A DNA stretch of 63,941 bases, the filler included, from Bigelowiella natans CCMP2755 (lineage: Eukaryota > Protista > Cercozoa), in NCBI GenBank assembly GCA_000320545.1. It is 5 parts of 5 records of this genome, joined end to end, with 100 filler letters (N's around TTAATTAATTAA, not from the genome) between each part and the next. Parts side by side here need not be neighbours in the genome. Positions count along the whole stretch, not along the records: positions 43,372 to 62,782 come from ADNK01003557.1; 4 more parts are not named here. One strand, given 5' to 3'. The stretch's first letter is position 1. Each line of letters opens with the position of its first letter. A model generated the notes under the pieces. The model searched no databases, was not told the origin of the DNA, and saw only the letters and a program-made list of their open reading frames with translations. This document shows, piece after piece, positions 43,693 to 59,999 of this stretch. Both the position numbers and the translations under genes were made by a program.

Positions 43693-44576
43693 GAGGAGGA
43701 GGAGGAGGAGGAGGAGGAGGAGGATCAGCAGCAGGAAAGCCAGCAACAGCATACGCGTATATATGCATAATAAGCAGCGGTGAAGAATGACGATAACCTT
43801 CGACGACCACAGCGTCGCTTCCATATTAGTGATATTAACAAACAGCAAAGATGACAGGGAAAAGCAACTTTATACCATCACACCTGTTTCTACATCACAC
43901 CTGTTTCTGAAGGTCACTTCGGCCCCGTATTGAAGGCCTATTTTGACCAACGAGCTGGTACAAGCACAAGGAGGACAATATCATTACAGATGGGGAGGGG
44001 ATGAGAGAGAGCAGGGGATCTAATCGAGGGGAATCGTCATCATCATCACCGTAGTTTATCGACGTCATCGTAGCTCTCAATTGCCTCGTTAAGTCTCTGC
44101 AGGGCCTACGACCGATGCCATGCGTGATGATAAGAGGGAATTCAGGCAAGGGAGAAGGAGGGGGGACAAATATGATTGGAGATTAGGAGGAAGGTAGATT
44201 TCACGTGCTAATGCATGAGCACTCTCTCAAGCCGTTATTTCGCCATACATGTGGTGTGCTCATTAGTGCAGGAAGGGTTAGGAATGGAAACAACACCTTC
44301 GGAGCGGAGTTGACGTACCCGTTTATCATCTGCGATGGTTGACGCATGGGTGATGATGGTAGGGAGGACGAAGAAGAAGAAGAAGAAGGAGGAGGAGGAG
44401 AGGGCGGAGATATGAAAAGGATGAAGATGGTAAGGGTGAGATAGCGATGAGAGTGATTATGGATCAAGGAGCGAGGGTTTGTTAAATCGATATTAACTTG
44501 TTGCATCAGCATCATCATATATCTCCTATTTCTATACACACACACATACACACACACACACACGCTATTAATATAT

Positions 44577-44634
<58 letters not shown>

Positions 44635-45058: not shown

Positions 45059-45125
45059 CCTTACCTTGGGTCATATCGTGAGCGTAGCTCGCAACCCCAT
45101 CCTCAGGGGTTACTGAAGGATTCAC
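43372..45125 (-). CDS. Probable multi-exon gene of unknown function, truncated by contig end
   Basis: Phase-compatible exons ALQRLNEAIESYDDVDKLR|SLVKIGLQYGAEVTFRN and ...FCSALSI|SFQGALLCIDMVKSNFKDLNK. Confidence 0.35.
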
Positions 45126-45958
45126 AAACTCGAGGCAATTAAATTGGGAGGCGACCTAAATCACACCATTCGCTCCAATGAATAAACGGCAAACCATAGC
45201 AACTACTGCGGCCAAGACGATAAAGCATAGAGGACTAAAAAAACTGCAGCCCCCTGATTATTTGAATCTCTCTCTCTCTCTCACCCAAGCCCCTTTGACC
45301 CTTTCACCCCTCACCCCTCAATGAATATCTAACAGTAGCACCTGGAACATCCCGCCTTTACAGATCGACTCGCTGTGCAAGTTTAGAATGTCATTTGTTG
45401 TATTATGCCGCACTTTCAGGTTGGTTTTCTTTCCGTCGCCTTTGGTTAAAAGCAATGAACATGGAGATGCAGCGCTAGGATGATAGATTGAAGTAGCAAT
45501 GGTGGATTTGTGGGGAAGCATTGTTGAGTTTCGACTTAAAAAGAGATTGTCACTGTCGCCTTGCAAAAAATGCAGCGAGGTGTGAGAACTGAAAGGCAAA
45601 AAAAACACGCAAACTGCAACAACCTTCCGCTTCAGTCCACTGCCGGACGCCTTGAAGCGCTTGCCCTTTTTCTTTCCACTCTTTTTTTGCCCTCGCATGG
45701 GAAGGCAGGCTTGGGGTCAGGGTTCAATTGGTGGGGGGTCATTGTGCGAGCTAGGTTCTTGGTTTTGGCGCCGAAATCGGAACTTGGCGCGGAAACAGAA
45801 AGCGCTGCCGAGTTTTTTTTGGAGTTGTGGTGCAGCAAAACGTGTGCACCACAAGTTGAATTCAATGATGTTGTTGACAACATCGGGGATTGTGCTTGCG
45901 TGCGACAACATGGCCTCTGTGACTCATGGTGACATGGCACCATGAGTCACGTTGCAAT

Positions 45959-47698
45959 TCACCGAATCGACAAATTGCCAAAGACACATGGTGTCGGAAA
46001 GTGCGCAAGCATGCATGCATTGCACACGCAAACGTGCATGACTGACACACTGGCACTGACACTGAACTTGAACAAAACCACACGCCTGGCATGCTGCCTG
46101 ATGTAAGCACGCGCTTGGTGGTCATGACCGACCACACCACTCCCCCCCCCTCCCTTCCAAGAAGAAAAATGAGGGGTCATGCCCCAAGAAACAAAAGGGC
46201 CAAAATCCACCTTCTTGCGGCTGCGTTCACCAGGTGGAATGTCACTTCGCGAAATTCGTCCCCCCTCCGTTCCAACAGATTCTGAAGAACCAGAAGAACC
46301 ATCAGAACGATCAGAAACATCATCGCTCACGTCATCCGGGGAGACTTCCTGCAGCGGAGGGAGCTCCCTGAAGGCACCATGCGGTGAGAGGCACTTGGCA
46401 TGAACATCATTTTCATGTCCCGCAGCGAGGTCAACAACAACACAAGTGTTCCCCCTCTTGCTTTTCGACACAATGGTGACCGGCCCCGTCTTGTCAACTT
46501 GGTGCTTTTTCGTCACAACATTCTGGCTTCTGTTCTCTTTGCGGTGCAACCAAACGAGGTCTCCAACCGCAAAAGAATCTTGGACGGGAAGTTTGTCATT
46601 GCGGCGGAAATTTTCCACTGGCTTGCAGTCTTCCTTGAGCGCAGCATGAAGCAAGCGAAATTTTTCAAGCCCTGGACACGTTCATCCAACTGAACCACAT
46701 CCGGCTAGCCGGGGCACCAAGACTTTCAGCATTCATGTCCGCGAGGAATCTTGGTTGATGTCCAAGTGAAAGCCTCGCGGGAGAATGTCCATTTTCATCG
46801 GTGGTGGCATTGACACCAAGTGCAACCATGTCCAGGTGCCTGTGCCAATTCTTCGCATCGTCAAGGTTCTGGAGCAGCACAGCCACAATCCCATCATTTG
46901 TGGCTCTGGGCTTGCGCCCCAGAACCGAGTTCCCTTGGCTGTTCTCAGCCGACATTTTGAGGAACTTTGGCCTCAGCCCGTTCTGCAGATGTGACATCAC
47001 ATTCCCTGCATTTTCCGGGCCCTGATCCACAAGGATCTTTTCAGGGCAACCATGCTGCAAAATGCAAGTCATGACAAAATCTGCAGTCTTGGCTGAGCTG
47101 ATTCTTTTGACAGCTCGCGCATGAATGCATCCAACAGCCATTGCACAAAGCGTCTGGATGCAATGCTTGGTCCCTTCAACAGGACCAATGGTGTCAACCG
47201 CAATGATGCCATTGAGCTCCGCATCCGCATGTTGCTGGTGAGGGGTCTGCCTCATGCGTGTCTTGGTCCGCACACACACTCGGCAGCCCCTTGCAAACTT
47301 GCGGCAATCCCGCTGCAGCCCGCTAGCCCGGGCCAACGATGAGCACGCAAAACCCGGGCAGCCAAATCATTCGCATTGCGATGATTTGACACGTTGTCAA
47401 CGTGGTGAGCCTGCATCACTTTGATGTGATCCGCAGCTGGAACACACAGCTGCAGCGGGATGCCACCGCCCACCTGGAAAGCTCCCACACGATGCAGCGC
47501 ACCATCGACGATCTTGCACCGCGACCGCACCAGTGAATGGTTGGCGCCATTTGCATCCTGCAGCGCAGCAATTGTTTTGCCAAAGTCTTGTTCTTGATGC
47601 GCCAGCTTGCATTCCGGCAACAGCGATTCCATGCGCACTTCCATCGCCCCACACTCCAACGTGGGCGCAATGCTGCACACAGATGCACAGGCCACCAC
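45959..47698 (-). pseudogene. Gypsy integrase remnant (Zn-binding, rve core, GPY/F domain), frameshifted
   Basis: IVDGALHR...QLCVP...QAHH...NH...AHRWPG, CRVCVRTK, IIAVDTIGP, HGCPEKILVDQG, NWHRHL...GHSPARLSLGHQPR, FAVGDLVWL...TGPVTIV...VHAKCLSPH, spread over three ORFs (47698-47252, 47336-46665, 46654-45959). Confidence 0.88.
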
Positions 47699-48306
47699 CA
47701 GTGCAATTAGCCAACAGACGCGCTGCTAGCTGATGCTTGTGCTTGCACGTTGATGCAATCAATGCCATTGAACACAAAACACTGAAACCCTGATGATGAA
47801 AATGCATTGTGAGCTCAAGCATGCATGCCAAACAAGCTCCCAATGGGACATTGCCGCTCGCACGCGGGTCTTTTGTCCCCCATCCATGTGCTTCATCATC
47901 AAGCCACACCAGAAGAATGCAACCATCACCTGCATGATGCCAACATGTCACATCATGCCAACGTGTTGTCTGAACCCATGTGACATCGTGCAGAAACCCC
48001 CATGCCACGCATGCAACATGCACCTCTTTGCATGCCAACGCGCATCAACACAGACAGGCCCACATGCATGCACAAACTTGTGCACAAAAGAAAACATGAT
48101 GAAAGCCAAACCTGTGCATGCCACCCAATGTGTGCATGACTTGGAAAGCCTGTCGCACTGCCCAATGCAAATGCGCAAGCATGCATGCATTGCACGTGCA
48201 AACGTGCATGACTGACACACTGGTGCCAACACCAAACTTGAACAAAACCACATGCCTAGCATGCTGCCTGATGCAAGCACGCGCTTGGTGGTCATGACCG
48301 ACCACA
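45992..48306 (-). mobile_element. Degenerate, internally deleted Ty3/gypsy element (two LTRs plus integrase), TpA-hypermutated
   Basis: Direct repeats 48306-48151 and 46136-45992 start TGTGGTCGG and end CGACA. A 4-bp TSD ATGG lies at 45988-45991 and 48307-48310, and a polypurine tract at 46141-46158 abuts the 3' LTR. No gag, RT or RNase H recognisable. Confidence 0.85.
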
Positions 48307-48666
48307 ATGGTGTTGCGTGTTCATCGTGTGCATGCAAAGTGTGGGGCGGTTGTTCCTGGCGTTGCAATGCGCATCAATTCTGGTGCACAATGTGCAGTCA
48401 ACAACAATGACAACAATTTCCCAAAGCCAAATGAAGTGCATCAGAGCAGCACGAAATGCGGCGGTCATGGCCGTGCGTCCATTTGTTCATCTCTCCTCAC
48501 CAAGATGCATGGCTTTCGTGCATGTTCGCACGTGCAGTGGTTCTCTTGACTTTTTGACAGGTGGAGTGTCAGGCCACATCCCCATTTCTTTCCATGTCGA
48601 CCTTTCCCTTTTTGGTTTCTCGGTTTTGCAGTGATGCGTCTCCTCCTGCCCTTCCTTCCTTTTTCT

Positions 48667-51600
48667 TCATTTTTTGCATTTTGACATGAGTGAGGACATC
48701 ATAGCTTTGCATTTGGAACCATCATCATGCATTTGGCAGGCAGAGTACACGTCAAGAGCCTTTTTGTGTTCCGTGATCGCCTCCGGGTACTTCCCCATGC
48801 TGTCGTACACAAGGCCGATGTTGCGGTAGCTAGTAGCCACATCCGGATGGGGTTGTTCCGTGCCGTACACCTTCAACTTCATAGCAAGACTCTTCTTGTA
48901 TTCCGTGAGCGCATCCGGGTACTTTCCCATGCTATCGTACACCCCGCCGATGTTGTTGTAGCTAGTCGCCACATCCGGATGGGGCTTCTCCGTGCCGTAC
49001 ACCTTCAACCTCATAGCAAGACTCTTCTTGTATTCCGTCAGCGCCTCCGGGTACTTCCCCATGACTTTGTACACCATGCCGATGTTGTTGTAGCTTTGAG
49101 CCACATCCGGATGGGGTTTCTCCGTGCCGTACACCTTCAACCTCATAGCAAGACTCTTCTTGTGTTCCGTCAGCGCCTCCGGGTACTTCCCCATGACTTC
49201 GTACACTCCGCCGATGTTGTTGTAGCTAGTCGCCACAGAAGGATGGGGTTGTTCCGTGCCGTACACCTTCAACCTCATAGCAAGACTCTTCTTGTATTCC
49301 GTCAGCGCCTCCGGGTACTTCCCCATGCTACGGTACACTATGCCGATGTTGTTGTAGCTAGTCGCCACATCCGGATGGGGTTGTTCCGTGCCGTACACCT
49401 TCAAATATATACCAAGACCCTTCTTGTATTCCGTGAGCGCCTCCGGGTACTTCCCCATGCTTTTGTACACTACGCCGATGTTGTTGTGGCTAATCGCCAC
49501 AGAAGGATGGGGTTTCTCCGTGCCGTACACCTTCAAATAGGTGCCAAGACTCTTCTTGTATTCCGTGAGCGCCTCCGGGTACTTCCCCATGCCATCGTAC
49601 ACAAGGCCGATGTTGTTGTAGCTACCAGCTACATACGGATGGGGTTTATCTTTACCGTACACCTTCAACCTCATACCAAGACTCTTCTTGTATTCCGTGA
49701 GCGCCTCCGGGTACTTCCCCATCCTATAGTACACTGCGCCGATGTTGTGGTAGCTACTCGCCACATCCGGATGGGGTTTCTCCGTGCCGTACACCTTCAA
49801 CCTCATAGCAAGGCTCTTCTTGTATTCCGTCAGCGCCTCCGGGTACTTCCCCATCCTATAGTACACTCCCCCGATGTTGTTGTAGCTAGTCGCCTCATCC
49901 GGATGGGGCTTCTCCGTGCCGTACACCTTCAACCTCATATCAAGACTCTTATTGAATTCCGTCAGCGCCTCCGGGTACTTCCCCATGCTATCGTACACTG
50001 TGCCGATGCTGTAGTAGATGCTAGCCATTTCTGGTACATTTTCTGTTTTTGATTCAGTAGAAACTAATGCTTTAGTTTCAGTTTCAGCGAGTTTGGCGCT
50101 TAATCTGAACCAACGTAAAGCTTTATCATAAAGGCATGCAACGGCACAGGCCTTTCCTAAAGCCCTTGCTAGCCGCCAACTGTGTTCTGCTTTGGAGGAC
50201 TTGTGCAGCGTGGTTCCGTGCTGGAGCACTGTAGCCCATTCTTCCTGGCGGTTGTGAGATTCACTATAGTCTCCTCCGTAGGCAGTCAGGGCTTCAACCA
50301 GATTTCCAATGTTAATTTGTGGCTGCAGGTACCTCACTATCTCTTGCGTGACAGCGTGCATGTTTATACAATTGGTTTCTTGGCTCCATTGTATCAAGGA
50401 ATAACGCTTTAGAAGCGCTAACGCGACGCGCACGTCTTCGTCCTCTTCAGAGACAGTCAGCTGCCCGTCATCGTTCTTTTCATCTTCCTTGCAATCCTTG
50501 ATATCCTCAACCTGATTGGGCGATTCGTCAAATTTTAGAAGAAGAACCAGTTCCAATGGAATATTTTTCGGATCCAGGTACGCGAGCGAACGCAACAACG
50601 CGAGGCAGTCCACGCACGAACTTGCAGCGGTGTGCTTGATAGCGTCCAGGTTCTAGCAGACCACTTCGACGATGCTCTGTCCGTACCTGATGCTCTTGTT
50701 GGGGTTCTTAATCAGAAACTTTTTCCTTCCTAGAGACTGCTTCTTTCGCAAATTCTCGATGCGATCTGCTACCTTGCAGTAGCCCATCTCTTTGCAGTGG
50801 CTGAAGAATTGCGCTAGGATCACGGGCATACCCGAGAACTCGGTTTTCAGGTACTCCATGCAGTCCTTCGCATCTCTGTCTTTTGGGTCGGGCATTTTTA
50901 GGCCGAATTTGCGGGCGAACTGCACCAGGTCTTCTTCATCCATGAGCCCGTCAATCGGCCAGCGTTTGACGTCCAGACTCCAATCGGTGGTTTTGCTGTT
51001 TCTAGACGTTAGGATCACGTGTCCTTTGTTCCTAGGTAAGAACTCAGCTATGTCACTGCAATCACCAACATCGTCGAACACCAGGAGGCAGCGTTCAGTC
51101 TCGATTCGTTCCCTGATGGTTTGGATAGCCGATTTGATGTCCTTTTTGTCAACAACGTGCAGGCCTGGGATGTTCTTCTCAGCGATGCGCATGTACCCGA
51201 TCTTGAGCTGCTCAGTTGTTTGGCAATCTAGCCAAAACGCGTAAGAGTATTGACCGGTCTCAATGAGGGCGTCGAACAACCGGACGGCCAACTGGCTCTT
51301 CCCAATGCCCCCATGGCCACAGAGCAGATGCACTTGTTTGCTGGTATCTTTGAGTTCATCCAAAACCTGCTTGACTACTTTCTCCCGCCCAACGAAGAAA
51401 GACACTTGGTCTGGGCCGGGGATGAGCGTCATTGAAGCTCGGAGTCTCATCTGAAATTTAATTTAAAAATGAAATGTACACACACAGATGTAAAGATCAA
51501 GTTTTAGATGCCACGCGGTTTCCTCGTGGAAAGGAGGGAAGGCAAATGGGGGATGGGTCCTGTACCGACCGAGGGGGGAGGAAAGAAAAAAATGTCGGCG

Positions 51601-54600
51601 CGTTTTTGTGTAGATGCACAATGAACTAAATGTTATGAAGATGTAAATGTACACACTGATACTCCCAAAAAACCGTACCAACCTTTTCTTTCTTATTCTC
51701 TTCCTCTATGAGCATCCCTGCAACGCGGACTAGATGCTGTTTGTCCTCAATCACCATCTTTTGGCTCCCGGGTGCCGAAGAAACAGCTGTTCTCAGCATT
51801 CGTTCCGCCAATTTTGTGCACAGAGCAGGATTGCGTACATCCTTGCCAACCTTTACGTCTGCGAACATGCATGTCCAATGGGTGTATCTGTCAACCCAAT
51901 CCGCCAACATCGACTCTAAAAAGTAACGACACCTTTGTAAAGCGTTGAAAAATGGTAAGATTTTAGGCCTTGAGTAGCAATGAACTTCGAGTGTAAATGT
52001 ATTAGAAACAGTTTCTTGAATCGCTCTTTACACAAAGGGTTCATCTCCACAGCCTGCAAGTATACGTGTCAATTACTGCTTGAACCGAAAAAAATATGAT
52101 GACAATTTTTCACAATGATTAACTCTGATAGAAGATCATTTTGTACCTTGCAACAAGGGTAATCAATTTTCTTCCTTGACGTAGTAAACAGCAATAGAGA
52201 TTTGCTGATCTTTAGAATCTGGTGAAATGCTTGCGGTCCAAGGAAATTGGATACGTTGTCGCAAATCTATAAGACAAAAATTTCACCTGGGTTCAACCTC
52301 AACACTAGACACCCTCATAACATTCATCTATTCAAACGAAAAAGGTACCAGTAAGATTCGTTTTTCTTTTTTATCTTTGAGCGAATGGAGAGGATCTCCT
52401 GCTATCAAATGGTGGCTTTTATCGGAACATGTCGTTTTTGCAACCGCCGATAAAACACCCTTTTCATCAGCAATACCGGTAAGGTCCACCTGAAGAAAAA
52501 ATGCCATAACCGTTACGAATACGCTAACAACACCTCGAACGTACATGAATTGTATTCGAATGAAATCTTGCATCCATTTTATGTGCACAGAATAAACCCA
52601 TTACATACACGCGTGCAAACATGCACGGAAAACACAATCATGACCCAATAGATAGCATCTGGCCCGTCGTTGTCATGCCACATGGACCGGGCTACCACCT
52701 CCGCCAAAACAGATTTCCCGCTACCCTTCCCACCTACGATTTGGATCCATTGAGTTGCAAACGTTTTCCTGAAAACAGCATGGTCGTTCTTTATGGAAAG
52801 CCTGCAATTTTCCAAGATTTCACGATACTGCTTCTTCACTACATCTCGTGAGAAGAAAGACCCAGGATCTGGATCTGGGATCCATCCCGTTTTGGGCTCG
52901 ATTTGTTCCAACTCCCTGAACTCGTATGTCACGTTGTGAACTTCATCGTTGTCAGTGGACCGGGGTAGAAGTATCAATTTGTCTACTTCATTCTCAGCTA
53001 AATCTGCCCAAAGGAGCTCCTCTTGTACTTCCTGATTGATGTTTTCTTCCTCGCAGAAGATCCGAAAGTCTCGTTCTACCTTCCACTTTGCATTGTATGT
53101 TGTGTATTGCGCATGCAGAGACTTGAGTTTTTCCTCGAGCTTGGCTGCGATTGATGATGGCTTGGGATGCTCCTCCAGGTAAAAAAGCGCTCGGTTTTTA
53201 CATTGTTGAGCTATCACACGGAGTCTTCGCTTGGCCTGTTCAAAAGCTTCTGATACAGAGTGCCCTTGTAGCAACCGTTGATAAAATATACCCGCAAATA
53301 CCGGGGCACCGTAATCGCTGAGTTCGTCCTTTCCTCGACAAGCTATGACGTGGCTCACTAATCCATCTTCTATGAGTTTTTTGCCTACAATCTCGCTATG
53401 GCATGCCGCTAGATACACAATCTTAGGCCGTCCATTTCGATTCCTTCTGAACATTTCCGCAAGGGCTTTTCCATCAAGGTATTTGCTGGTTTTTCCAATC
53501 GCTGGGCCACCTTCAATGCAGAGACCCTTCTCAGGATCGCCGTGCCCAGAGAAATGGAGACAAAAACAATTCGAGCCGATAGCAGTATCTATTTGCTCCT
53601 CAGTCGCACGGTAAGTCGAATACTGAAATTTGGGAAAAACTCTGATGAGTTCCCGCATCAGCTCATACTCAGTTTGGAAATCCAGTGCCTTATTGTCGGC
53701 CTCGTTTATCGGAGAAGACGATACGTACGCGATGCGGGCTGGGAGCTGCTCGGCCGATACCATTGGTTTTGCGTGTGACGGAGATTTCTAGGGGTTCAGA
53801 GAAACGTGGAAAGAAGGTCGATGTGATACAAGGAGGGAAGCCAAAACAAAGAGAGTCAGAGAGTGTTTAGACATAAACAAAGAGAAAGGGAGCGGGGGGG
53901 GGTGGGGGGTTAAAAGAGATGATCTGGCAGGGAGAATCCACGGAGATGATCATGAAAATTAGAACTAACATTTATGCTCAATTCGTTATGATAACAATAA
54001 ACAGTAACAGTTTTCGTTGGTAGTCATAGTGTTGTTAATTAATTATAATTATAATAATCATAATTTAGAATTTAGAATTGCATGGATGATGCTAAGTGCG
54101 ATTTTCCAATTGCATTTCTAAAATCGTGATGAAGCACAATATGCATTCTATGGAAGAGGGGATTTAGGGTCCAAATGCTTGCGCTTTTCTTGCTCTTACT
54201 TGCGATGAGGGTTCTCTGGTATCTGGTTTTTCGAACATTTTTTTGAGTTTTTTTACAAGAATCTTTAGTTGCATTCGTGGCCCCATCTTCTTGCATTCAA
54301 CCATCTCTTTCACGTCATCCGGGGTCATTTCCAACAGAGCCTCACCTGTGAGGTCGTTGTCCTCTATCATCTGTGGATGCCGCAACATCAGTTAAGTCTC
54401 CGTGTCATCACCGATGACGTGTTGGAATATTTATGTGCAATGAAAACTTGCGTGACTAAACACTCGGGTCTTTGCTAGTGATGTGTGTGACTTTGTCGGA
54501 GGAGGAAGGGGGGGAGATGCGGGTCAATGTTCGAACCTTAATAATGTTTGGCTTTGCTTTGAGAGCACCGGCATTCGCACGGAGCCATTGCACTAGACCC

Positions 54601-54650: not shown

Positions 54651-55605
54651 CTGTGTGATGATTTCAATGCACCTGGCCCAGAGTGGAACGAAAGCCTACT
54701 GGCTTTGGTCTTTCTCTCTCTCCCTCCCTCCTCTTGATGCGTGAGAGGGATGCTCTCTAATCGATCTTTCTTGCAATTGTCAATTTTGTCATTTCTAGCT
54801 AAAAAAAATGCCTACAAAATGTTGTCGCAGGATGAATTTCTACTGCATTGATGACCTAAAGGCAACATGGCCGTGAAACTGCAGCGGTGGCAAATTTGAA
54901 TCACGGCAAAGTTGTTTGTGCCGGGTAGTAGCGGGCACATGCGGGTCAATTGGAAAACACCTAAAGGACAACGATGCCATGCAGCAAACGTTGGATTTCA
55001 TTTTGAAAATATCCGATACTAAGATTATCCCATAATAATGCGGCCGTTTTTGTCCTGAACGACATGAGAATAGTGATGTCGCAGTGCATTTTCGGGGTTC
55101 AGGTAACTGTAGGTCTGCAACTGAACGGAGATCGATCATTGTTCCCGTCTCTGCTCATACACTATCGATTTCGATGAATGTCCGGCCCTCGCCAGTGAGG
55201 TTTGGAGATGATGCGCTTCGCGTCGTGATGGCGAGCTAGTTTTCTAGAGGGGGTTGAGGCACCAGACGAGTTTTTTTTTCGTATCATATATAAGTGACCA
55301 CACTGTACCATCGTCGATTCGGCTTTGCGACATATCACGGGATGGCATCTTCCCGCCCAACATCTCCCCGAAGCGAGGTCTCAGGAGAGGTGACTCCGCA
55401 CATTACAGCTGCGTACGGCTTCATCTTTAATTGAATATTTTGCGCTTTTCTAGAAACCATCTCCTCCACGGAGTAAGCAGGAAAAGAAGCTGAAGAGGTC
55501 TTTCACTGTTCAAATCAAGACAACGGGCAATGACGATATTTCTCCACAGGTAGGCTGGTGTTGAAAGTGTTACTGTATTTAGGGATATCTCTCTATTTCT
55601 CTCTC

Positions 55606-55670
<65 letters not shown>

Positions 55671-55700
55671 ATTTTTCATCTAAAATCTAGCGATATTATA

Positions 55701-55731
<31 letters not shown>

Positions 55732-55745
55732 TCTGAACAATATTA

Positions 55746-55792
<47 letters not shown>

Positions 55793-55796
55793 TCTC

Positions 55797-55867
<71 letters not shown>

Positions 55868-55898
55868 TTTTTCACTAAAATCTAGCGATATATATTCT

Positions 55899-55941
<43 letters not shown>

Positions 55942-58147: not shown

Positions 58148-58457
58148 GAAGCCCGCTCTTTGAAATCGCAGTCACATTAAAATAATAAAATCCGAATAGT
58201 CTTCGCTATAAATCCATATCGTTGTATTTCCCCTTTCGTTTCTTATCCTTGATTTACCACTTCTTCAACTTATACGTCAATGGGTACGGAATCGATTGGT
58301 AGAATCTTCCTCGCTGTGTCCCCAAATCGCTAGTTCAAATAGTATCCTGCAGCTTTGCACAGCGTGCAGCCAGTTTCAATATCTCCCTCCCTCCCCCCCG
58401 CCCTTACTCCAATCCCCAATCCGATGTAGGCGAAGTCAGGAAGATAGTAAATCTGTG

Positions 58458-59999
58458 ATGTCGGAGAGCACTGAAATACGGAGCAGCGAGGAAACCGCCC
58501 TTCCGAGAGGCTCTTCGCTATTCCAGCTTCGCGGACGTTTGCAGGCCTTCACAAGCACGGAGAGCTACATGCAAAAGCTGCTGGTTTACATAATGCTGCA
58601 CATCCTCGTCGCAATCCTGGTCCCGCTGCTGGCGTGCCAACCCACAACGATCGTCACGACAGTTATCGCAGGATTCTCGCTAGCACTGTCGTCGATTGCT
58701 CTCCTCGAGCTCCTCTTCGAGCTGTTTATCTACCAAGAGGCCTTCATCTGCAGCTCTACATTCGTGGCCGATTTCGTCGTTGTCTCCGCGCGGTTGGTGC
58801 TGGAAGTGCTGTACTTCAGTGGTTGGCAATCGGCGCTGTCGAAGCAGCTTTTTGCCTTCACCCTCCTGCGGTTTTGCCGCGTGTTCGGAATTCTCCATAC
58901 GAAGTACAAGAGCATGCTGGGAGAGAAAAACCAGGACGCCGCCTTACTGGTAGAGACGACTGGGGAGGCGTTTCGGCTTCGCCGGATGATAAGGGACCTG
59001 AAGTACAAGAACAAACAGCTGCAGAAGAAGCTCAAACGCGCGAAGTCGGGGAGGAAGGGAAAGTCGCAGTCCAACATCGTCACGCACCAAGGCACCCTCG
59101 AAGGAAGCATGAAGATAAAATCCCGGGGGCTCATGGGTACATTCTTATGGGCAGAGCGCTTCTTCATCCTTGACCGGCGCTCCCCCGAACACCCGACGCT
59201 CACGTTCTACAAGAGTTCCGCGGATGCGATTGTGAATTCGCAGGGGGAGGCGAAAATCGACTTCGCAACTGTGCAGGGGATCAAAGTTAAGAAGAGCAAC
59301 CGCAAAAAGCTCTTAATCGTCATTTCCCGCCGCGACGACGCGCCATTCGAGATCACCGCGAAAACAGAGGCAGAGGCCTCGGAATGGAGCAAAGCGATGA
59401 GGGAGGTCTTGGACGAAATGCGCCGGAAAGAGGAAGAAACCCACAGCATGGCTGAGAAATCGTACAACATGATCAAAAGCACGCTAGTCCCCGAGGAGGT
59501 GAAGAAGATAAAGGAAAAGAAGGTCATGTCCAAAAAGGAGACGATTTCGATCATTGAAAGCATGCACAGCAAGAATGAGAAAAGACGCGCGGCGCGGGAC
59601 CGAGCTGCGACGTATGCTGCCCCCCCCCTCGAGCGCAAGTCTGAAGAAAAAGACACGCAGGCAACAAGGGGCCGCGCTGCTACGTCCATTAAGCGATCAT
59701 CGACGAAAACCACACCAGCAACCTCGCCGGCAGCAATGATGACCCTTGGAGAATCAGCCGCTTTTAACATTGGAAAGTCAAATACAACAGCGCCGAAGAA
59801 CTCCAACTCCTCGGATCCCATGGGAATGGTAAGTCCGCTAAGGCGATATGTCACGTCGGAGCAGAATCCTACGGTTTCATCATTTCGGGTGTCCTCGGCG
59901 ACAGAGGCAACTTCTTCCTCACGGCTGGCCAACTCGCCGCATGCAAATGCGGCTGCTAAGAACCCTATCAAAGGGAAAAAGATCGATGCTGTGGATTGA
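58458..59999 (+). CDS. Voltage-sensor-like 4-TM domain, coiled coil and PH domain protein (single exon)
   Basis: Four hydrophobic segments with S2 LLELLFELF, S3 VADFVVV and S4 LLRFCRVFGI; heptad region LRRMIRDLKYKNKQLQKKL; PH pattern LEGSMKIK...WAERFFIL...LTFYKS...FEITAKTEAEASEWSKAM. The ORF is open from 58296; first Met at 58458. Confidence 0.75.
   Translation: MSESTEIRSSEETALPRGSSLFQLRGRLQAFTSTESYMQKLLVYIMLHILVAILVPLLACQPTTIVTTVIAGFSLALSSIALLELLFELFIYQEAFICSSTFVADFVVVSARLVLEVLYFSGWQSALSKQLFAFTLLRFCRVFGILHTKYKSMLGEKNQDAALLVETTGEAFRLRRMIRDLKYKNKQLQKKLKRAKSGRKGKSQSNIVTHQGTLEGSMKIKSRGLMGTFLWAERFFILDRRSPEHPTLTFYKSSADAIVNSQGEAKIDFATVQGIKVKKSNRKKLLIVISRRDDAPFEITAKTEAEASEWSKAMREVLDEMRRKEEETHSMAEKSYNMIKSTLVPEEVKKIKEKKVMSKKETISIIESMHSKNEKRRAARDRAATYAAPPLERKSEEKDTQATRGRAATSIKRSSTKTTPATSPAAMMTLGESAAFNIGKSNTTAPKNSNSSDPMGMVSPLRRYVTSEQNPTVSSFRVSSATEATSSSRLANSPHANAAAKNPIKGKKIDAVD

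What the first reader, a model, noticed from the sequence alone, without database searches (positions are those of the whole stretch)
45545..48660. Candidate undescribed genome-defence system: both-strand A-to-G hypermutation of TpA in transposon DNA (a mirror image of fungal RIP)
Seen (manual count): only about 7 TpA in 3.1 kb, where well over 100 would be expected, while CpG remains common. The integrase remnant has no Tyr: positions normally Tyr in gypsy integrases read His or Cys (RCKIVDGALHR, QAHH, AHRWPG, GTKHCI, NWHRHL, NTCVV, CLSPH). TAY-to-CAY and TAY-to-TGY mean A-to-G on either strand. Known: RIP and 5mC decay are C-to-T and create TpA or TpG from CpA or CpG; ADAR editing of an mRNA would mark one strand only; TadA-family deaminases prefer TA. 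Inference: a near-saturating, repeat-targeted DNA (or dsRNA-intermediate) adenine-deamination process. I know no named pathway for this but cannot exclude prior reports.
Basis: partly seen in the sequence, partly recalled or inferred. Interest (0 to 1): 0.93.

Follow-up and report, generated by a model that had tools for sequence, protein, structure and literature searches.

The report
TpA-hypermutated retrotransposon remnant, Bigelowiella natans
A dead 3.2-kb retrotransposon fragment in the marine alga Bigelowiella natans has had almost every TA dinucleotide rewritten to TG or CA; this is a real, striking hypermutation of foreign DNA, but a 2026 preprint already described it in this same alga.

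Summary
Window 45538-48701 holds 7 TpA where about 175-180 are expected, with a matching excess of CpA and TpG, normal CpG and edges sharp to tens of bases. The same sequence stands without differences in contigs of three independent DNA runs.

The tract is a degenerate Ty3/gypsy-like integrase remnant plus a nested multi-copy insert, just downstream of a CHAT/NB-ARC/TPR gene. Tyr positions of an intact relative read His or Cys here. A 138-nt internal duplicate differs only by transitions, and 8 of its 12 differing bases lie on 5 inferred TpA sites, three of them CA-versus-TG doublets. So the copies mutated independently, on both strands, after they separated.

The organism is Bigelowiella natans: the nearest paralogues are Bigna1 gene models. 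Both paralogues are on the low-TpA gene lists of Mettrop et al. (bioRxiv 10.64898/2026.01.13.699255). That preprint showed de novo TpA-to-TpG/CpA hypermutation of integrated viral DNA in mutation-accumulation lines. The system is therefore real but not undescribed.

What I add:
- A saturated transposon target.
- An extended-context hierarchy in which sites with a TAT are lost first and CTAG is spared (5 of the 7 survivors).
- The same signature in related copies from marine metagenomes.

The enzyme is unknown.

The parts
45538..48701 (.). TpA-depleted, CpA/TpG-enriched hypermutated tract (3164 bp, 7 TpA)
   Evidence: Rho(TpA) is 0.03-0.05 and Rho(CpA+TpG) 1.50-2.10 in its three 1-kb windows. 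Found unchanged in three DNA runs.
47252..47698 (-). Integrase N-terminal / H2C2 zinc-binding remnant (ORF, 148 aa)
   Evidence: Aligns to P0003:1270-1400 and to L003:1-762, both of which carry Pfam Integrase_H2C2. All five Tyr of the relative in this block are replaced: C, H, H, H, R. Pfam itself finds nothing in the window ORF.
46665..47336 (-). Integrase catalytic-core remnant (ORF, 223 aa)
   Evidence: phmmer against 1.84 billion representatives: P0003, a 1761-aa polyprotein with RVT_1, RNase H and Integrase_H2C2, scores E 2.6e-37. 526 hits in all. No Pfam hit at E<=0.1.
45959..46654 (-). Integrase C-terminal region remnant (ORF, 231 aa)
   Evidence: 58% identical to P0002 = jgi/Bigna1/145314. 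Aligns with the C-terminal parts of P0002, P0004, P0008 and P0011.
45999..46136 (.). Direct repeat D1a (138 nt)
   Evidence: 91% identical to D1b. All 12 differences are transitions, so the copies are identical in purine/pyrimidine space.
48169..48306 (.). Direct repeat D1b (138 nt)
   Evidence: Against D1a: three CA-versus-TG doublets, two sites where one copy keeps TA and the other has TG or CA, three CpG-type changes and one other transition.
47696..48306 (.). Nested multi-copy insert (about 611 bp), itself TpA-depleted
   Evidence: A contig in all three DNA runs joins 47695 directly to 48307. Depth here is about 5-25 times the single-copy level. A GRCCAC hexamer at 47690-47695 recurs at 48300-48305.
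45751..45754 (.). Surviving TpA in CTAG
46705..46708 (.). Surviving TpA in CTAG
47323..47326 (.). Surviving TpA in CTAG
47726..47729 (.). Surviving TpA in CTAG
48256..48259 (.). Surviving TpA in CTAG; the D1a copy reads CTGG at this site
46103..46106 (.). Surviving TpA in GTAA; the D1b copy reads GCAA at this site
47707..47710 (.). Surviving TpA in TTAG

Best explanation
The tract is a dead, rearranged fragment of a lineage-specific Ty3/gypsy-like LTR retrotransposon. It keeps the integrase region only and carries a nested insertion of a multi-copy repeat. [quoted passage not shown]

After the DNA was in place, nearly every TpA was converted to TpG or CpA, that is, an A:T-to-G:C transition at the A of 5'-TA-3' on either strand. 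The agent is the TpA-directed hypermutation that Mettrop et al. (2026) saw arising de novo in integrated viral DNA of this alga.

Shown here:
- TpA is lost and CpA/TpG gained in matching amounts.
- Both strands are hit, and the two outcomes are finely interleaved.
- Duplicated copies mutated independently.
- The edges are sharp.
- CTAG is spared.

Inferred:
- The process works on chromosomal DNA of silenced foreign elements and accumulates over many generations to saturation.
- The lesion is enzymatic deamination of deoxyadenosine to deoxyinosine, read as G. I put this chemistry at about 55%.
- The rate depends on the base 3' of the A: T is fastest, C and A intermediate, G slowest. A site with G on both strands, CTAG, is then practically immune.

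The enzyme and the signal that marks the target are unknown.
For: Composition and edges. A simulation of TA to CA/TG on ordinary local sequence reproduces the tract's dinucleotide profile and GC gain.

Transposon identity.

Direction of change:
- Tyr of the intact relative becomes His or Cys.
- The intact relative L001 has normal TpA.
- In the D1 pair, 8 of the 12 differing bases lie on 5 TpA sites, with 3 CA/TG doublets, and both copies keep one TA that the other has lost.
- Paralogous contigs differ from the window by CA/TG doublets at 45548/9, 46043/4, 46054/5, 47731/2 and 47816/7.

Both strands, interleaved: heterogeneity of CA versus TG over 150-bp bins gives chi-square 18.7, df 20, p 0.54; runs test z +1.9.

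Organism: the nearest paralogues are EP00466_Bigelowiella_natans P002375 and P002612 (jgi/Bigna1/145314 and 147229). About 13 single-run DNA studies of 2025 plus one of 2021 hold the stretch, which fits the JGI-sequenced mutation-accumulation lines.

Prior demonstration: 230 of 231 de novo mutations in two integrated viral regions are A-to-G or T-to-C, reported as on TpA. There are 124 depleted clusters genome-wide. Both paralogues are in the preprint's Tables S6/S8.

Context:
- 5 of the 7 survivors are CTAG, against 3.9% of TpA in the flanks (Fisher p 2.5e-6; 6.8 CTAG expected, 5 seen; 169 other TpA expected, 2 seen).
- Partly depleted relatives show graded loss.
- My hand tally of the preprint's Table S2 gives the base 3' of the hit A as T 76, A 71, C 56, G 23.
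Against: - No de novo event can be seen at this locus, because it is saturated.
- No close unmutated ancestor of this copy was available, so most ancestral TpA sites are inferred from composition, not read.
- The hosts of the partly depleted relatives (L002-L007, marine metagenome contigs) are unknown, so their context pattern may belong to another species' enzyme.
- The Table S2 tally is not normalised to target availability. Taken alone it shows only about a two-fold deficit of TAG and no clear excess of TAT.
- A-to-G on one strand cannot be told from T-to-C on the other, so adenine deamination is not shown.
- In my window phase the first 1-kb window has Rho(CpA+TpG) 1.50, just under the preprint's 1.52 cluster threshold.
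Confidence: 0.9

Rival explanations
1. Same process and same targets, but the damaged base is the thymine of TpA. For example, oxidation to 5-hydroxymethyl- or 5-formyl-uracil, or another T modification that mispairs with G, gives T-to-C on either strand of the palindromic TpA.
For: Sequence data cannot separate A-to-G on one strand from T-to-C on the other. The context rule can be rewritten as ATA fastest, CTA slowest. From my own knowledge, thymine modification with a TpA preference exists in dinoflagellates, and 5-formyluracil mispairs with G. Four of the 211 hits in Table S2 are T-to-C at ATG or ATT, not at TpA.
Against: No thymine-modifying enzyme or modified base is reported for this alga in the literature I could search. 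Deamination of A gives a direct miscoding base and a clean transition-only spectrum.
Confidence: 0.2
2. The editing happened on the retrotransposon's RNA or on its reverse-transcription intermediate (ADAR-, TAD- or APOBEC-style), so the element arrived already mutated. That would explain edges that coincide with the insertion.
For: The edges are sharp. The target is a retroelement. From my own knowledge, ADAR can also deaminate the DNA strand of RNA:DNA hybrids.
Against: - CA and TG are interleaved at fine scale on both strands.
- The nested insert and its host are equally depleted.
- The D1 copies diverged at about as many TpA sites as a 138-nt stretch should ever have held.
- In the same organism the spectrum arises de novo in resident single-copy viral DNA that is transcriptionally silent.
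- The 3' G is the least favoured neighbour, the opposite of ADAR.
Confidence: 0.04
3. CpG decay or a RIP-like C-to-T process made the CpA and TpG excess. CA-versus-TG doublets are also what two independent deaminations of one CpG give.
For: Three of the 12 D1 differences are CpG-type. CA/TG doublets alone are ambiguous.
Against: - TpA is what is missing (7 of about 175), while CpG is near normal once the added C and G are allowed for.
- C-to-T would lower GC, but the tract is about 5 points higher than its surroundings.
- Tyr codons, not Arg codons, stand at the affected positions in relatives.
- Two D1 sites still read TA in one copy.
Confidence: 0.01
4. There was no mutation process: the sequence came with an intrinsically TA-free composition (horizontal transfer, selection), or it is an assembly or base-calling artefact.
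For: None beyond the composition itself.
Against: - The tract is identical in contigs of three independent runs.
- The intact family member has normal TpA.
- Depletion covers non-coding parts and all frames.
- Copies differ at exactly the TpA-derived sites.
Confidence: 0.01

Closest known systems
TpA-directed hypermutation of integrated viral DNA in Bigelowiella natans (Mettrop et al., bioRxiv 10.64898/2026.01.13.699255)
   Same: Same organism, same dinucleotide, same two products (TpG, CpA), both strands, foreign DNA as target, and the same genome-wide signature. The nearest paralogues of this integrase are on that paper's low-TpA gene lists.
   Different: - The target here is an LTR-retrotransposon remnant, not an NCLDV or virophage.
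- The tract is saturated (Rho 0.03-0.05 against 0.45 for their NCLDV).
- The paper reports only the dinucleotide. It has no mention of CTAG, trinucleotide context, integrase or LTR.
Repeat-induced point mutation (RIP) of fungi
   Same: Irreversible, dinucleotide-specific transition mutagenesis of mobile DNA in the chromosome, on both strands, to the point of destroying every reading frame.
   Different: RIP is C-to-T, mainly at CpA. It creates TpA, lowers GC and needs duplicated sequence. Here TpA is destroyed, GC rises, and duplication appears neither necessary (single-copy NCLDV) nor sufficient (higher-depth but unmutated stretch 45108-45537).
APOBEC3 editing of retroviruses and retrotransposons
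   Same: Deaminase-type hypermutation used against retroelements, with a short sequence context.
   Different: APOBEC3 is a cytosine deaminase acting on single-stranded minus-strand cDNA. It gives strand-asymmetric G-to-A before integration. Here the change is A:T to G:C, symmetric and post-integration.
ADAR hyper-editing of double-stranded RNA
   Same: A-to-G changes with a preference for a 5' U/T.
   Different: ADAR is a metazoan enzyme that edits RNA, so a retro-copied product would be marked on one strand only, and it prefers a 3' G (my own knowledge). Here both strands of DNA are marked and 3' G is the worst neighbour.
ADAT2/ADAT3 and TadA tRNA adenosine deaminases, the candidate proposed in the preprint
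   Same: The natural target A34 always follows U33, which matches the 5' T requirement. Engineered TadA and some ADAT2 enzymes can act on DNA.
   Different: In the eukaryotic tRNAs that are edited, the base after A34 is G, A or C and never U (my own knowledge). Here a 3' T is lost first in the relatives and 3' G is most resistant. No test of the enzyme exists.

Membership tests
B. natans TpA hypermutation (Mettrop et al. 2026) | The sequence belongs to the Bigelowiella natans nuclear genome | tested here: met
   The nearest paralogues, P0002 and P0011, are EukProt EP00466_Bigelowiella_natans entries (jgi/Bigna1/145314 and 147229). The window's own protein P0001 has the same two sources. The pattern of runs fits the JGI mutation-accumulation lines. 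The window's own record name is hidden, so this is very probable rather than proven.
B. natans TpA hypermutation (Mettrop et al. 2026) | [quoted passage not shown] | tested here: inconclusive
   Rho(TpA) is 0.03, 0.04, 0.05 and Rho(CpA+TpG) 1.50, 1.61, 2.10 in my phase. The first window misses the second threshold by 0.02, so the outcome depends on the window phase.
B. natans TpA hypermutation (Mettrop et al. 2026) | Changes are A-to-G or T-to-C at TpA, on both strands | tested here: met
   D1 pair, Tyr to His/Cys, CA/TG doublets in paralogous contigs, and even interleaving of CA and TG.
B. natans TpA hypermutation (Mettrop et al. 2026) | The target is foreign or mobile DNA | tested here: met
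   Ty3/gypsy-like integrase remnant plus a nested multi-copy insert.
B. natans TpA hypermutation (Mettrop et al. 2026) | De novo hits at this locus in mutation-accumulation lines | not testable with these tools
   Only 7 TpA remain, 5 of them in the resistant CTAG. The runs are coded and kept as contigs.
Ty3/gypsy LTR retrotransposon | Integrase with an H2C2 zinc-binding domain and a DDE core | tested here: met
   Homology to the integrase part of polyprotein P0003 (E 2.6e-37; Pfam Integrase_H2C2, RVT_1, RNase H in P0003). Pfam models do not score the mutated window ORFs at E<=0.1. The position of the catalytic Glu reads Gly.
Ty3/gypsy LTR retrotransposon | gag, protease, RT and RNase H upstream of the integrase | tested here: not met
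   Only about 1 kb lies upstream of the integrase inside the tract, and 611 bp of that is the nested insert. No RT-like ORF was found. The copy is a fragment.
Ty3/gypsy LTR retrotransposon | Long terminal repeats with a target-site duplication | tested here: inconclusive
   The only direct repeat is the 138-nt D1 pair, which looks like part of a separate multi-copy element.
Fungal RIP | C-to-T at CpA with gain of TpA; dependence on duplication | tested here: not met
   TpA is lost, GC is raised and CpG kept. The single-copy NCLDV is a target.
ADAR-type RNA hyper-editing | One strand marked; 3' G favoured | tested here: not met
   Both strands are marked and interleaved. Sites with 3' G on both strands are the survivors.
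ADAT2/3- or TadA-type deaminase acting on DNA | The enzyme produces the lesion | not testable with these tools
   The 5' T requirement fits. The order of 3' neighbours does not resemble natural tRNA contexts (my inference). No candidate gene lies in the window.

The most novel reading that the evidence does not exclude
The hypermutation has a strict extended motif: the A of TAT goes first, then TAC and TAA, then TAG, and palindromic CTAG is essentially immune. This fits neither ADAR nor ADAT2/3 preferences. The agent would then be a different, still unknown DNA-acting enzyme (or a thymine-directed chemistry). It would also operate on retrotransposons in wild marine relatives, making it a lineage-wide genome defence rather than an oddity of two viral inserts in one culture.
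Probability: 0.4. Interest if true: 0.7.

Novelty: already known. Interest (0 to 1): 0.5.

Why it matters
A cell that rewrites one dinucleotide in resident foreign DNA until every gene in it is dead would be a counterpart of fungal RIP and of APOBEC defence. It would be based on A:T-to-G:C changes and occur in a rhizarian alga. The phenomenon is known only from one 2026 preprint and its enzyme is unidentified.

This locus adds three things:
- Transposons are driven to complete saturation.
- Targeting stops within tens of bases of a functional host gene.
- There is a motif rule (CTAG spared, 3' T preferred) that any candidate enzyme must reproduce.

There is also a practical point. Because TAA and TAG cannot occur, such tracts are full of long false ORFs in all six frames. 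Gene callers have annotated them as proteins: P0001 here, and Bigna1 145314 and 147229.

Tried and rejected
- Pfam on the six tract ORFs: no family at E<=0.1.
- Word-indexed protein search with the 223-aa integrase ORF found only the window's own protein.
- The search with the neighbouring TPR ORF returned thousands of unrelated TPR proteins and no clue to the organism.
- The look-up of encoding contigs has no record for P0001, P0002 or P0011. I therefore could not read the DNA of the B. natans paralogues or polarise substitutions against a close copy.
- The available relatives L001-L003 are only about 56% identical to the tract at DNA level, too far for base-by-base polarity.
- Cluster look-ups gave no taxon for the marine-metagenome relatives.
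- Test for strand-coordinated patches of CA or TG along the tract: negative.
- My runs count on one mutation-accumulation line from Table S2 was also not significant (18 runs against 21.9 expected).
- Further literature searches found no other report of this kind of mutagenesis.
- A purine/pyrimidine-space search for hidden older duplicates inside the tract found only D1.
Full report
**1. The observation**

Window 45545-48660 contains 7 TpA where base composition predicts 175 (O/E 0.04). CpA is at 1.65, TpG at 1.82, CpG at 0.68 and GC at 52.6%. The whole 19.4-kb piece has TpA O/E 0.69.

A sliding profile and the list of TA positions put the tract at 45538-48701. TA occurs every 10-40 bases up to 45537 and again from 48702. 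Inside the tract the TA-free gaps reach 618 bp, against at most 156 bp anywhere in the flanks.

Two thousand shuffles of the tract give 180 +/- 10 TA and never fewer than 149. At the flanks' own TA density the probability of 7 or fewer is 3e-67.

The apparent CpG deficit is mostly arithmetic. I took ordinary local sequence and turned every TA outside CTAG at random into CA or TG. The result was TA 0.02-0.06, CA 1.3-1.55, TG 1.3-1.66, CG 0.73-0.93, and GC up by 3-5 points. That is close to the tract.

**2. Not an artefact**

The stretch is held by at least 14 DNA runs from separate studies. In three of them, contigs cover long parts of the tract, for example 46109-47260, with no difference at all.

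**3. What the DNA is**

On the minus strand three consecutive ORFs (47252-47698, 46665-47336, 45959-46654) are the remains of an integrase.

- Pfam does not score them.
- An exhaustive phmmer search with the middle ORF finds 526 relatives. The best full-length one is P0003, a 1761-aa polyprotein with zf-CCCH, RVT_1, RNase H and Integrase_H2C2 (E 2.6e-37).
- No RT or protease lies upstream in the window, so this copy is a fragment.

A contig present in all three DNA runs joins 47695 directly to 48307. Contig depth over 47726-48341 is 5-25 times the single-copy level. A GRCCAC hexamer stands at both ends of that interval. So 47696-48306 is a nested insertion of a multi-copy element.

The right-hand 138 nt of this insert (D1b, 48169-48306) recur at 45999-46136 (D1a).

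The right edge of the tract abuts the stop codon (48667-48669) of a CHAT/NB-ARC/TPR gene on the minus strand. RNA reads show that this gene's 3' end runs about 170 bases into the tract.

**4. Direction and timing of the changes**

- *Relatives.* The intact relative L001 has ordinary TpA (O/E 0.44-0.85), so the family did not start TA-free.
- *Tyrosine.* At 12 Tyr positions of P0003 the window reads His five times and Cys three times. This is as expected from TAY to CAY or TGY, and not from a CGY ancestor.
- *The D1 pair.* The two copies differ at 12 bases, all transitions, so they are identical in purine/pyrimidine space. Eight of the 12 lie on five sites best read as ancestral TpA:
  - three are CA in one copy and TG in the other;
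  - one is CTAG against CTGG;
  - one is GTAA against GCAA.

  Three further differences are CpG-type and one is another transition.
- *How much happened after duplication.* If both copies mutate independently, half of the doubly mutated sites end up alike and become invisible. Five visible sites therefore imply about eight ancestral TpA. That is what 138 nt of local sequence should hold (5.6% of dinucleotides). Essentially all of the loss in D1 thus happened after the copies separated.
- *Paralogous contigs.* They show the same CA/TG doublets against the window at five further places.
- *Both strands.* CA and TG are evenly interleaved along the tract (chi-square 18.7, df 20, p 0.54; runs test z +1.9). 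Both strands were hit everywhere, and there are no long strand-coordinated patches.

**5. Organism and prior art**

A full-text search found one relevant paper: Mettrop et al., bioRxiv 10.64898/2026.01.13.699255, version of April 2026.

What the preprint reports:
- Fifteen mutation-accumulation lines of Bigelowiella natans RCC623 were sequenced at JGI.
- 231 of 302 nuclear point mutations fall in an integrated NCLDV (scaffold 10) and a virophage (scaffold 146).
- 230 of those 231 are A-to-G or T-to-C, reported as on TpA, at about 1000 times the background rate and only in some lines.
- There are 124 clusters of TpA-depleted, CpA+TpG-enriched 1-kb windows.
- There are 324 and 470 low-TpA gene models, enriched for reverse-transcriptase and DDE domains.
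- An ADAT2 homologue is proposed as candidate enzyme.

How the window ties to it:
- The closest relatives of the window's integrase, P0002 (58-66% identical) and P0011, are EukProt Bigelowiella natans proteins, jgi/Bigna1/145314 and 147229.
- The window's own gene product comes from the same two sources.
- Both paralogues are listed in the preprint's Table S8, and 147229 also in Table S6.
- The flank TpA frequency (5.6%) and GC also match the paper's genome values.

So the window is B. natans. The preprint says nothing about CTAG, tri- or tetranucleotide context, integrase or LTR elements.

**6. What this locus adds: an extended context**

Five of the seven surviving TpA are in CTAG, although CTAG accounts for only 3.9% of TpA in the flanks (Fisher p 2.5e-6). 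At flank density the tract should hold 6.8 CTAG and has 5. It should hold 169 other TpA and has 2.

I sorted each site N1-T-A-N2 by the base 3' of the A on each strand. Related integrase-bearing contigs from marine metagenomes then show a graded series against the intact L001:

| Locus | Pattern of loss (observed/expected) |
|---|---|
| L003, L004, L006 | Almost every site with a 3' T on either strand is gone (L003: 0/22, 0/44, 1/44, 7/44). All other classes are kept. TGT is raised. |
| L002, L005, L007 | Most 3' C sites are also gone. |
| Window tract | Everything is gone except the class with G on both strands (CTAG). |

My hand tally of the preprint's Table S2 gives the base 3' of the hit A as T 76, A 71, C 56, G 23. 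G is again the rarest, but the figures are not normalised to the targets available.

From what I know of these enzymes, ADAR favours a 3' G, and the A34 edited by ADAT2/3 is followed by G, A or C but never U. The order seen here therefore argues, weakly, against both.

**7. Activity in related copies**

Near-identical pairs of the metagenome contigs differ preferentially at TpA-type sites:
- L005 and L007: 21 of 50 differing bases, including 4 CA/TG doublets, although TpA is only about 1% of their dinucleotides.
- L003 and L004: 9 of 22 differing bases.

The hosts of these contigs are unknown. Coverage is low for most of them (1.5-5x by contig name where given), so some transversions are probably sequencing errors.

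**8. Targeting**

Duplication does not seem to be the signal. The preprint's main target is single-copy. Here the stretch 45108-45537 shows about 2-3 times the baseline contig depth yet keeps its TpA.

The edges fall within tens of bases, one of them at the end of an expressed host gene. What marks the target is unknown; it could be chromatin, small RNA or something else.

**9. Verdict**

- Its status as undescribed is not right, and repeat targeting is not supported.
- The chemistry (adenine deamination against a thymine lesion) is open.
- CpG decay, RIP, RNA editing before integration, native composition and artefact are each contradicted by the evidence above.

Noticed in passing
window 48667-53763 (minus strand): A STAND/NLR-like gene lies in three adjacent ORFs: CHAT (52579-53763), NB-ARC (50653-51450) and TPR (48667-50613). 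The TPR part holds 9.6 tandem units of 132 bp (44 aa) at 88% identity. Contig depth there is 10-60 times single copy, so the family is large.
   Followed up: partly
window 45538-48701, all six frames: TAA and TAG cannot occur in the tract, so it is full of overlapping ORFs of 60-230 aa on both strands. One of them has been annotated as a protein (P0001, 196 aa). Hypermutated paralogues are annotated as Bigna1 145314 and 147229. Pfam no longer recognises any of the three.
   Followed up: partly
window 45548-45549: Ten bases inside the left edge the window and run X1 read TG, while the only contigs covering the place in runs X3 and X5 read CA. This may be a strain-level CA/TG difference at one ancestral TpA (recent activity), or it may come from a paralogue.
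   Followed up: no
window 45108-45537: Just outside the tract the contig depth is about 2-3 times the baseline. One run has a second contig about 7% diverged, yet TpA is only mildly low (O/E 0.5-0.7). Extra copies alone do not seem to trigger the process; the second contig could also be an allele.
   Followed up: no
L003:1-5600, L004, L006: Marine-metagenome contigs carry two tandem copies of the same retrotransposon family. Only TpA sites with a TAT on either strand are missing. This is either an early stage of the process or a narrower specificity in another host.
   Followed up: partly
preprint Table S2: Four of the 211 NCLDV hits are T-to-C at ATG or ATT rather than at TpA, although the text says all fall on TpA. 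A-to-G hits at TAG (3) and T-to-C hits at CTA (17) are unequal on scaffold 10.
   Followed up: no
window 55588-55934 and 44534-44634: Compound microsatellites, (TC)n(TG)n(AT)n(TC)n(TG)n(AT)n, with a local GC dip to 23%. The many CATG and TGCA runs in the tract are what a mutated (TA)n would look like.
   Followed up: no
window 58296-59999 (plus strand): A 567-aa ORF with a PH domain. It is an ordinary host gene with normal TpA.
   Followed up: no
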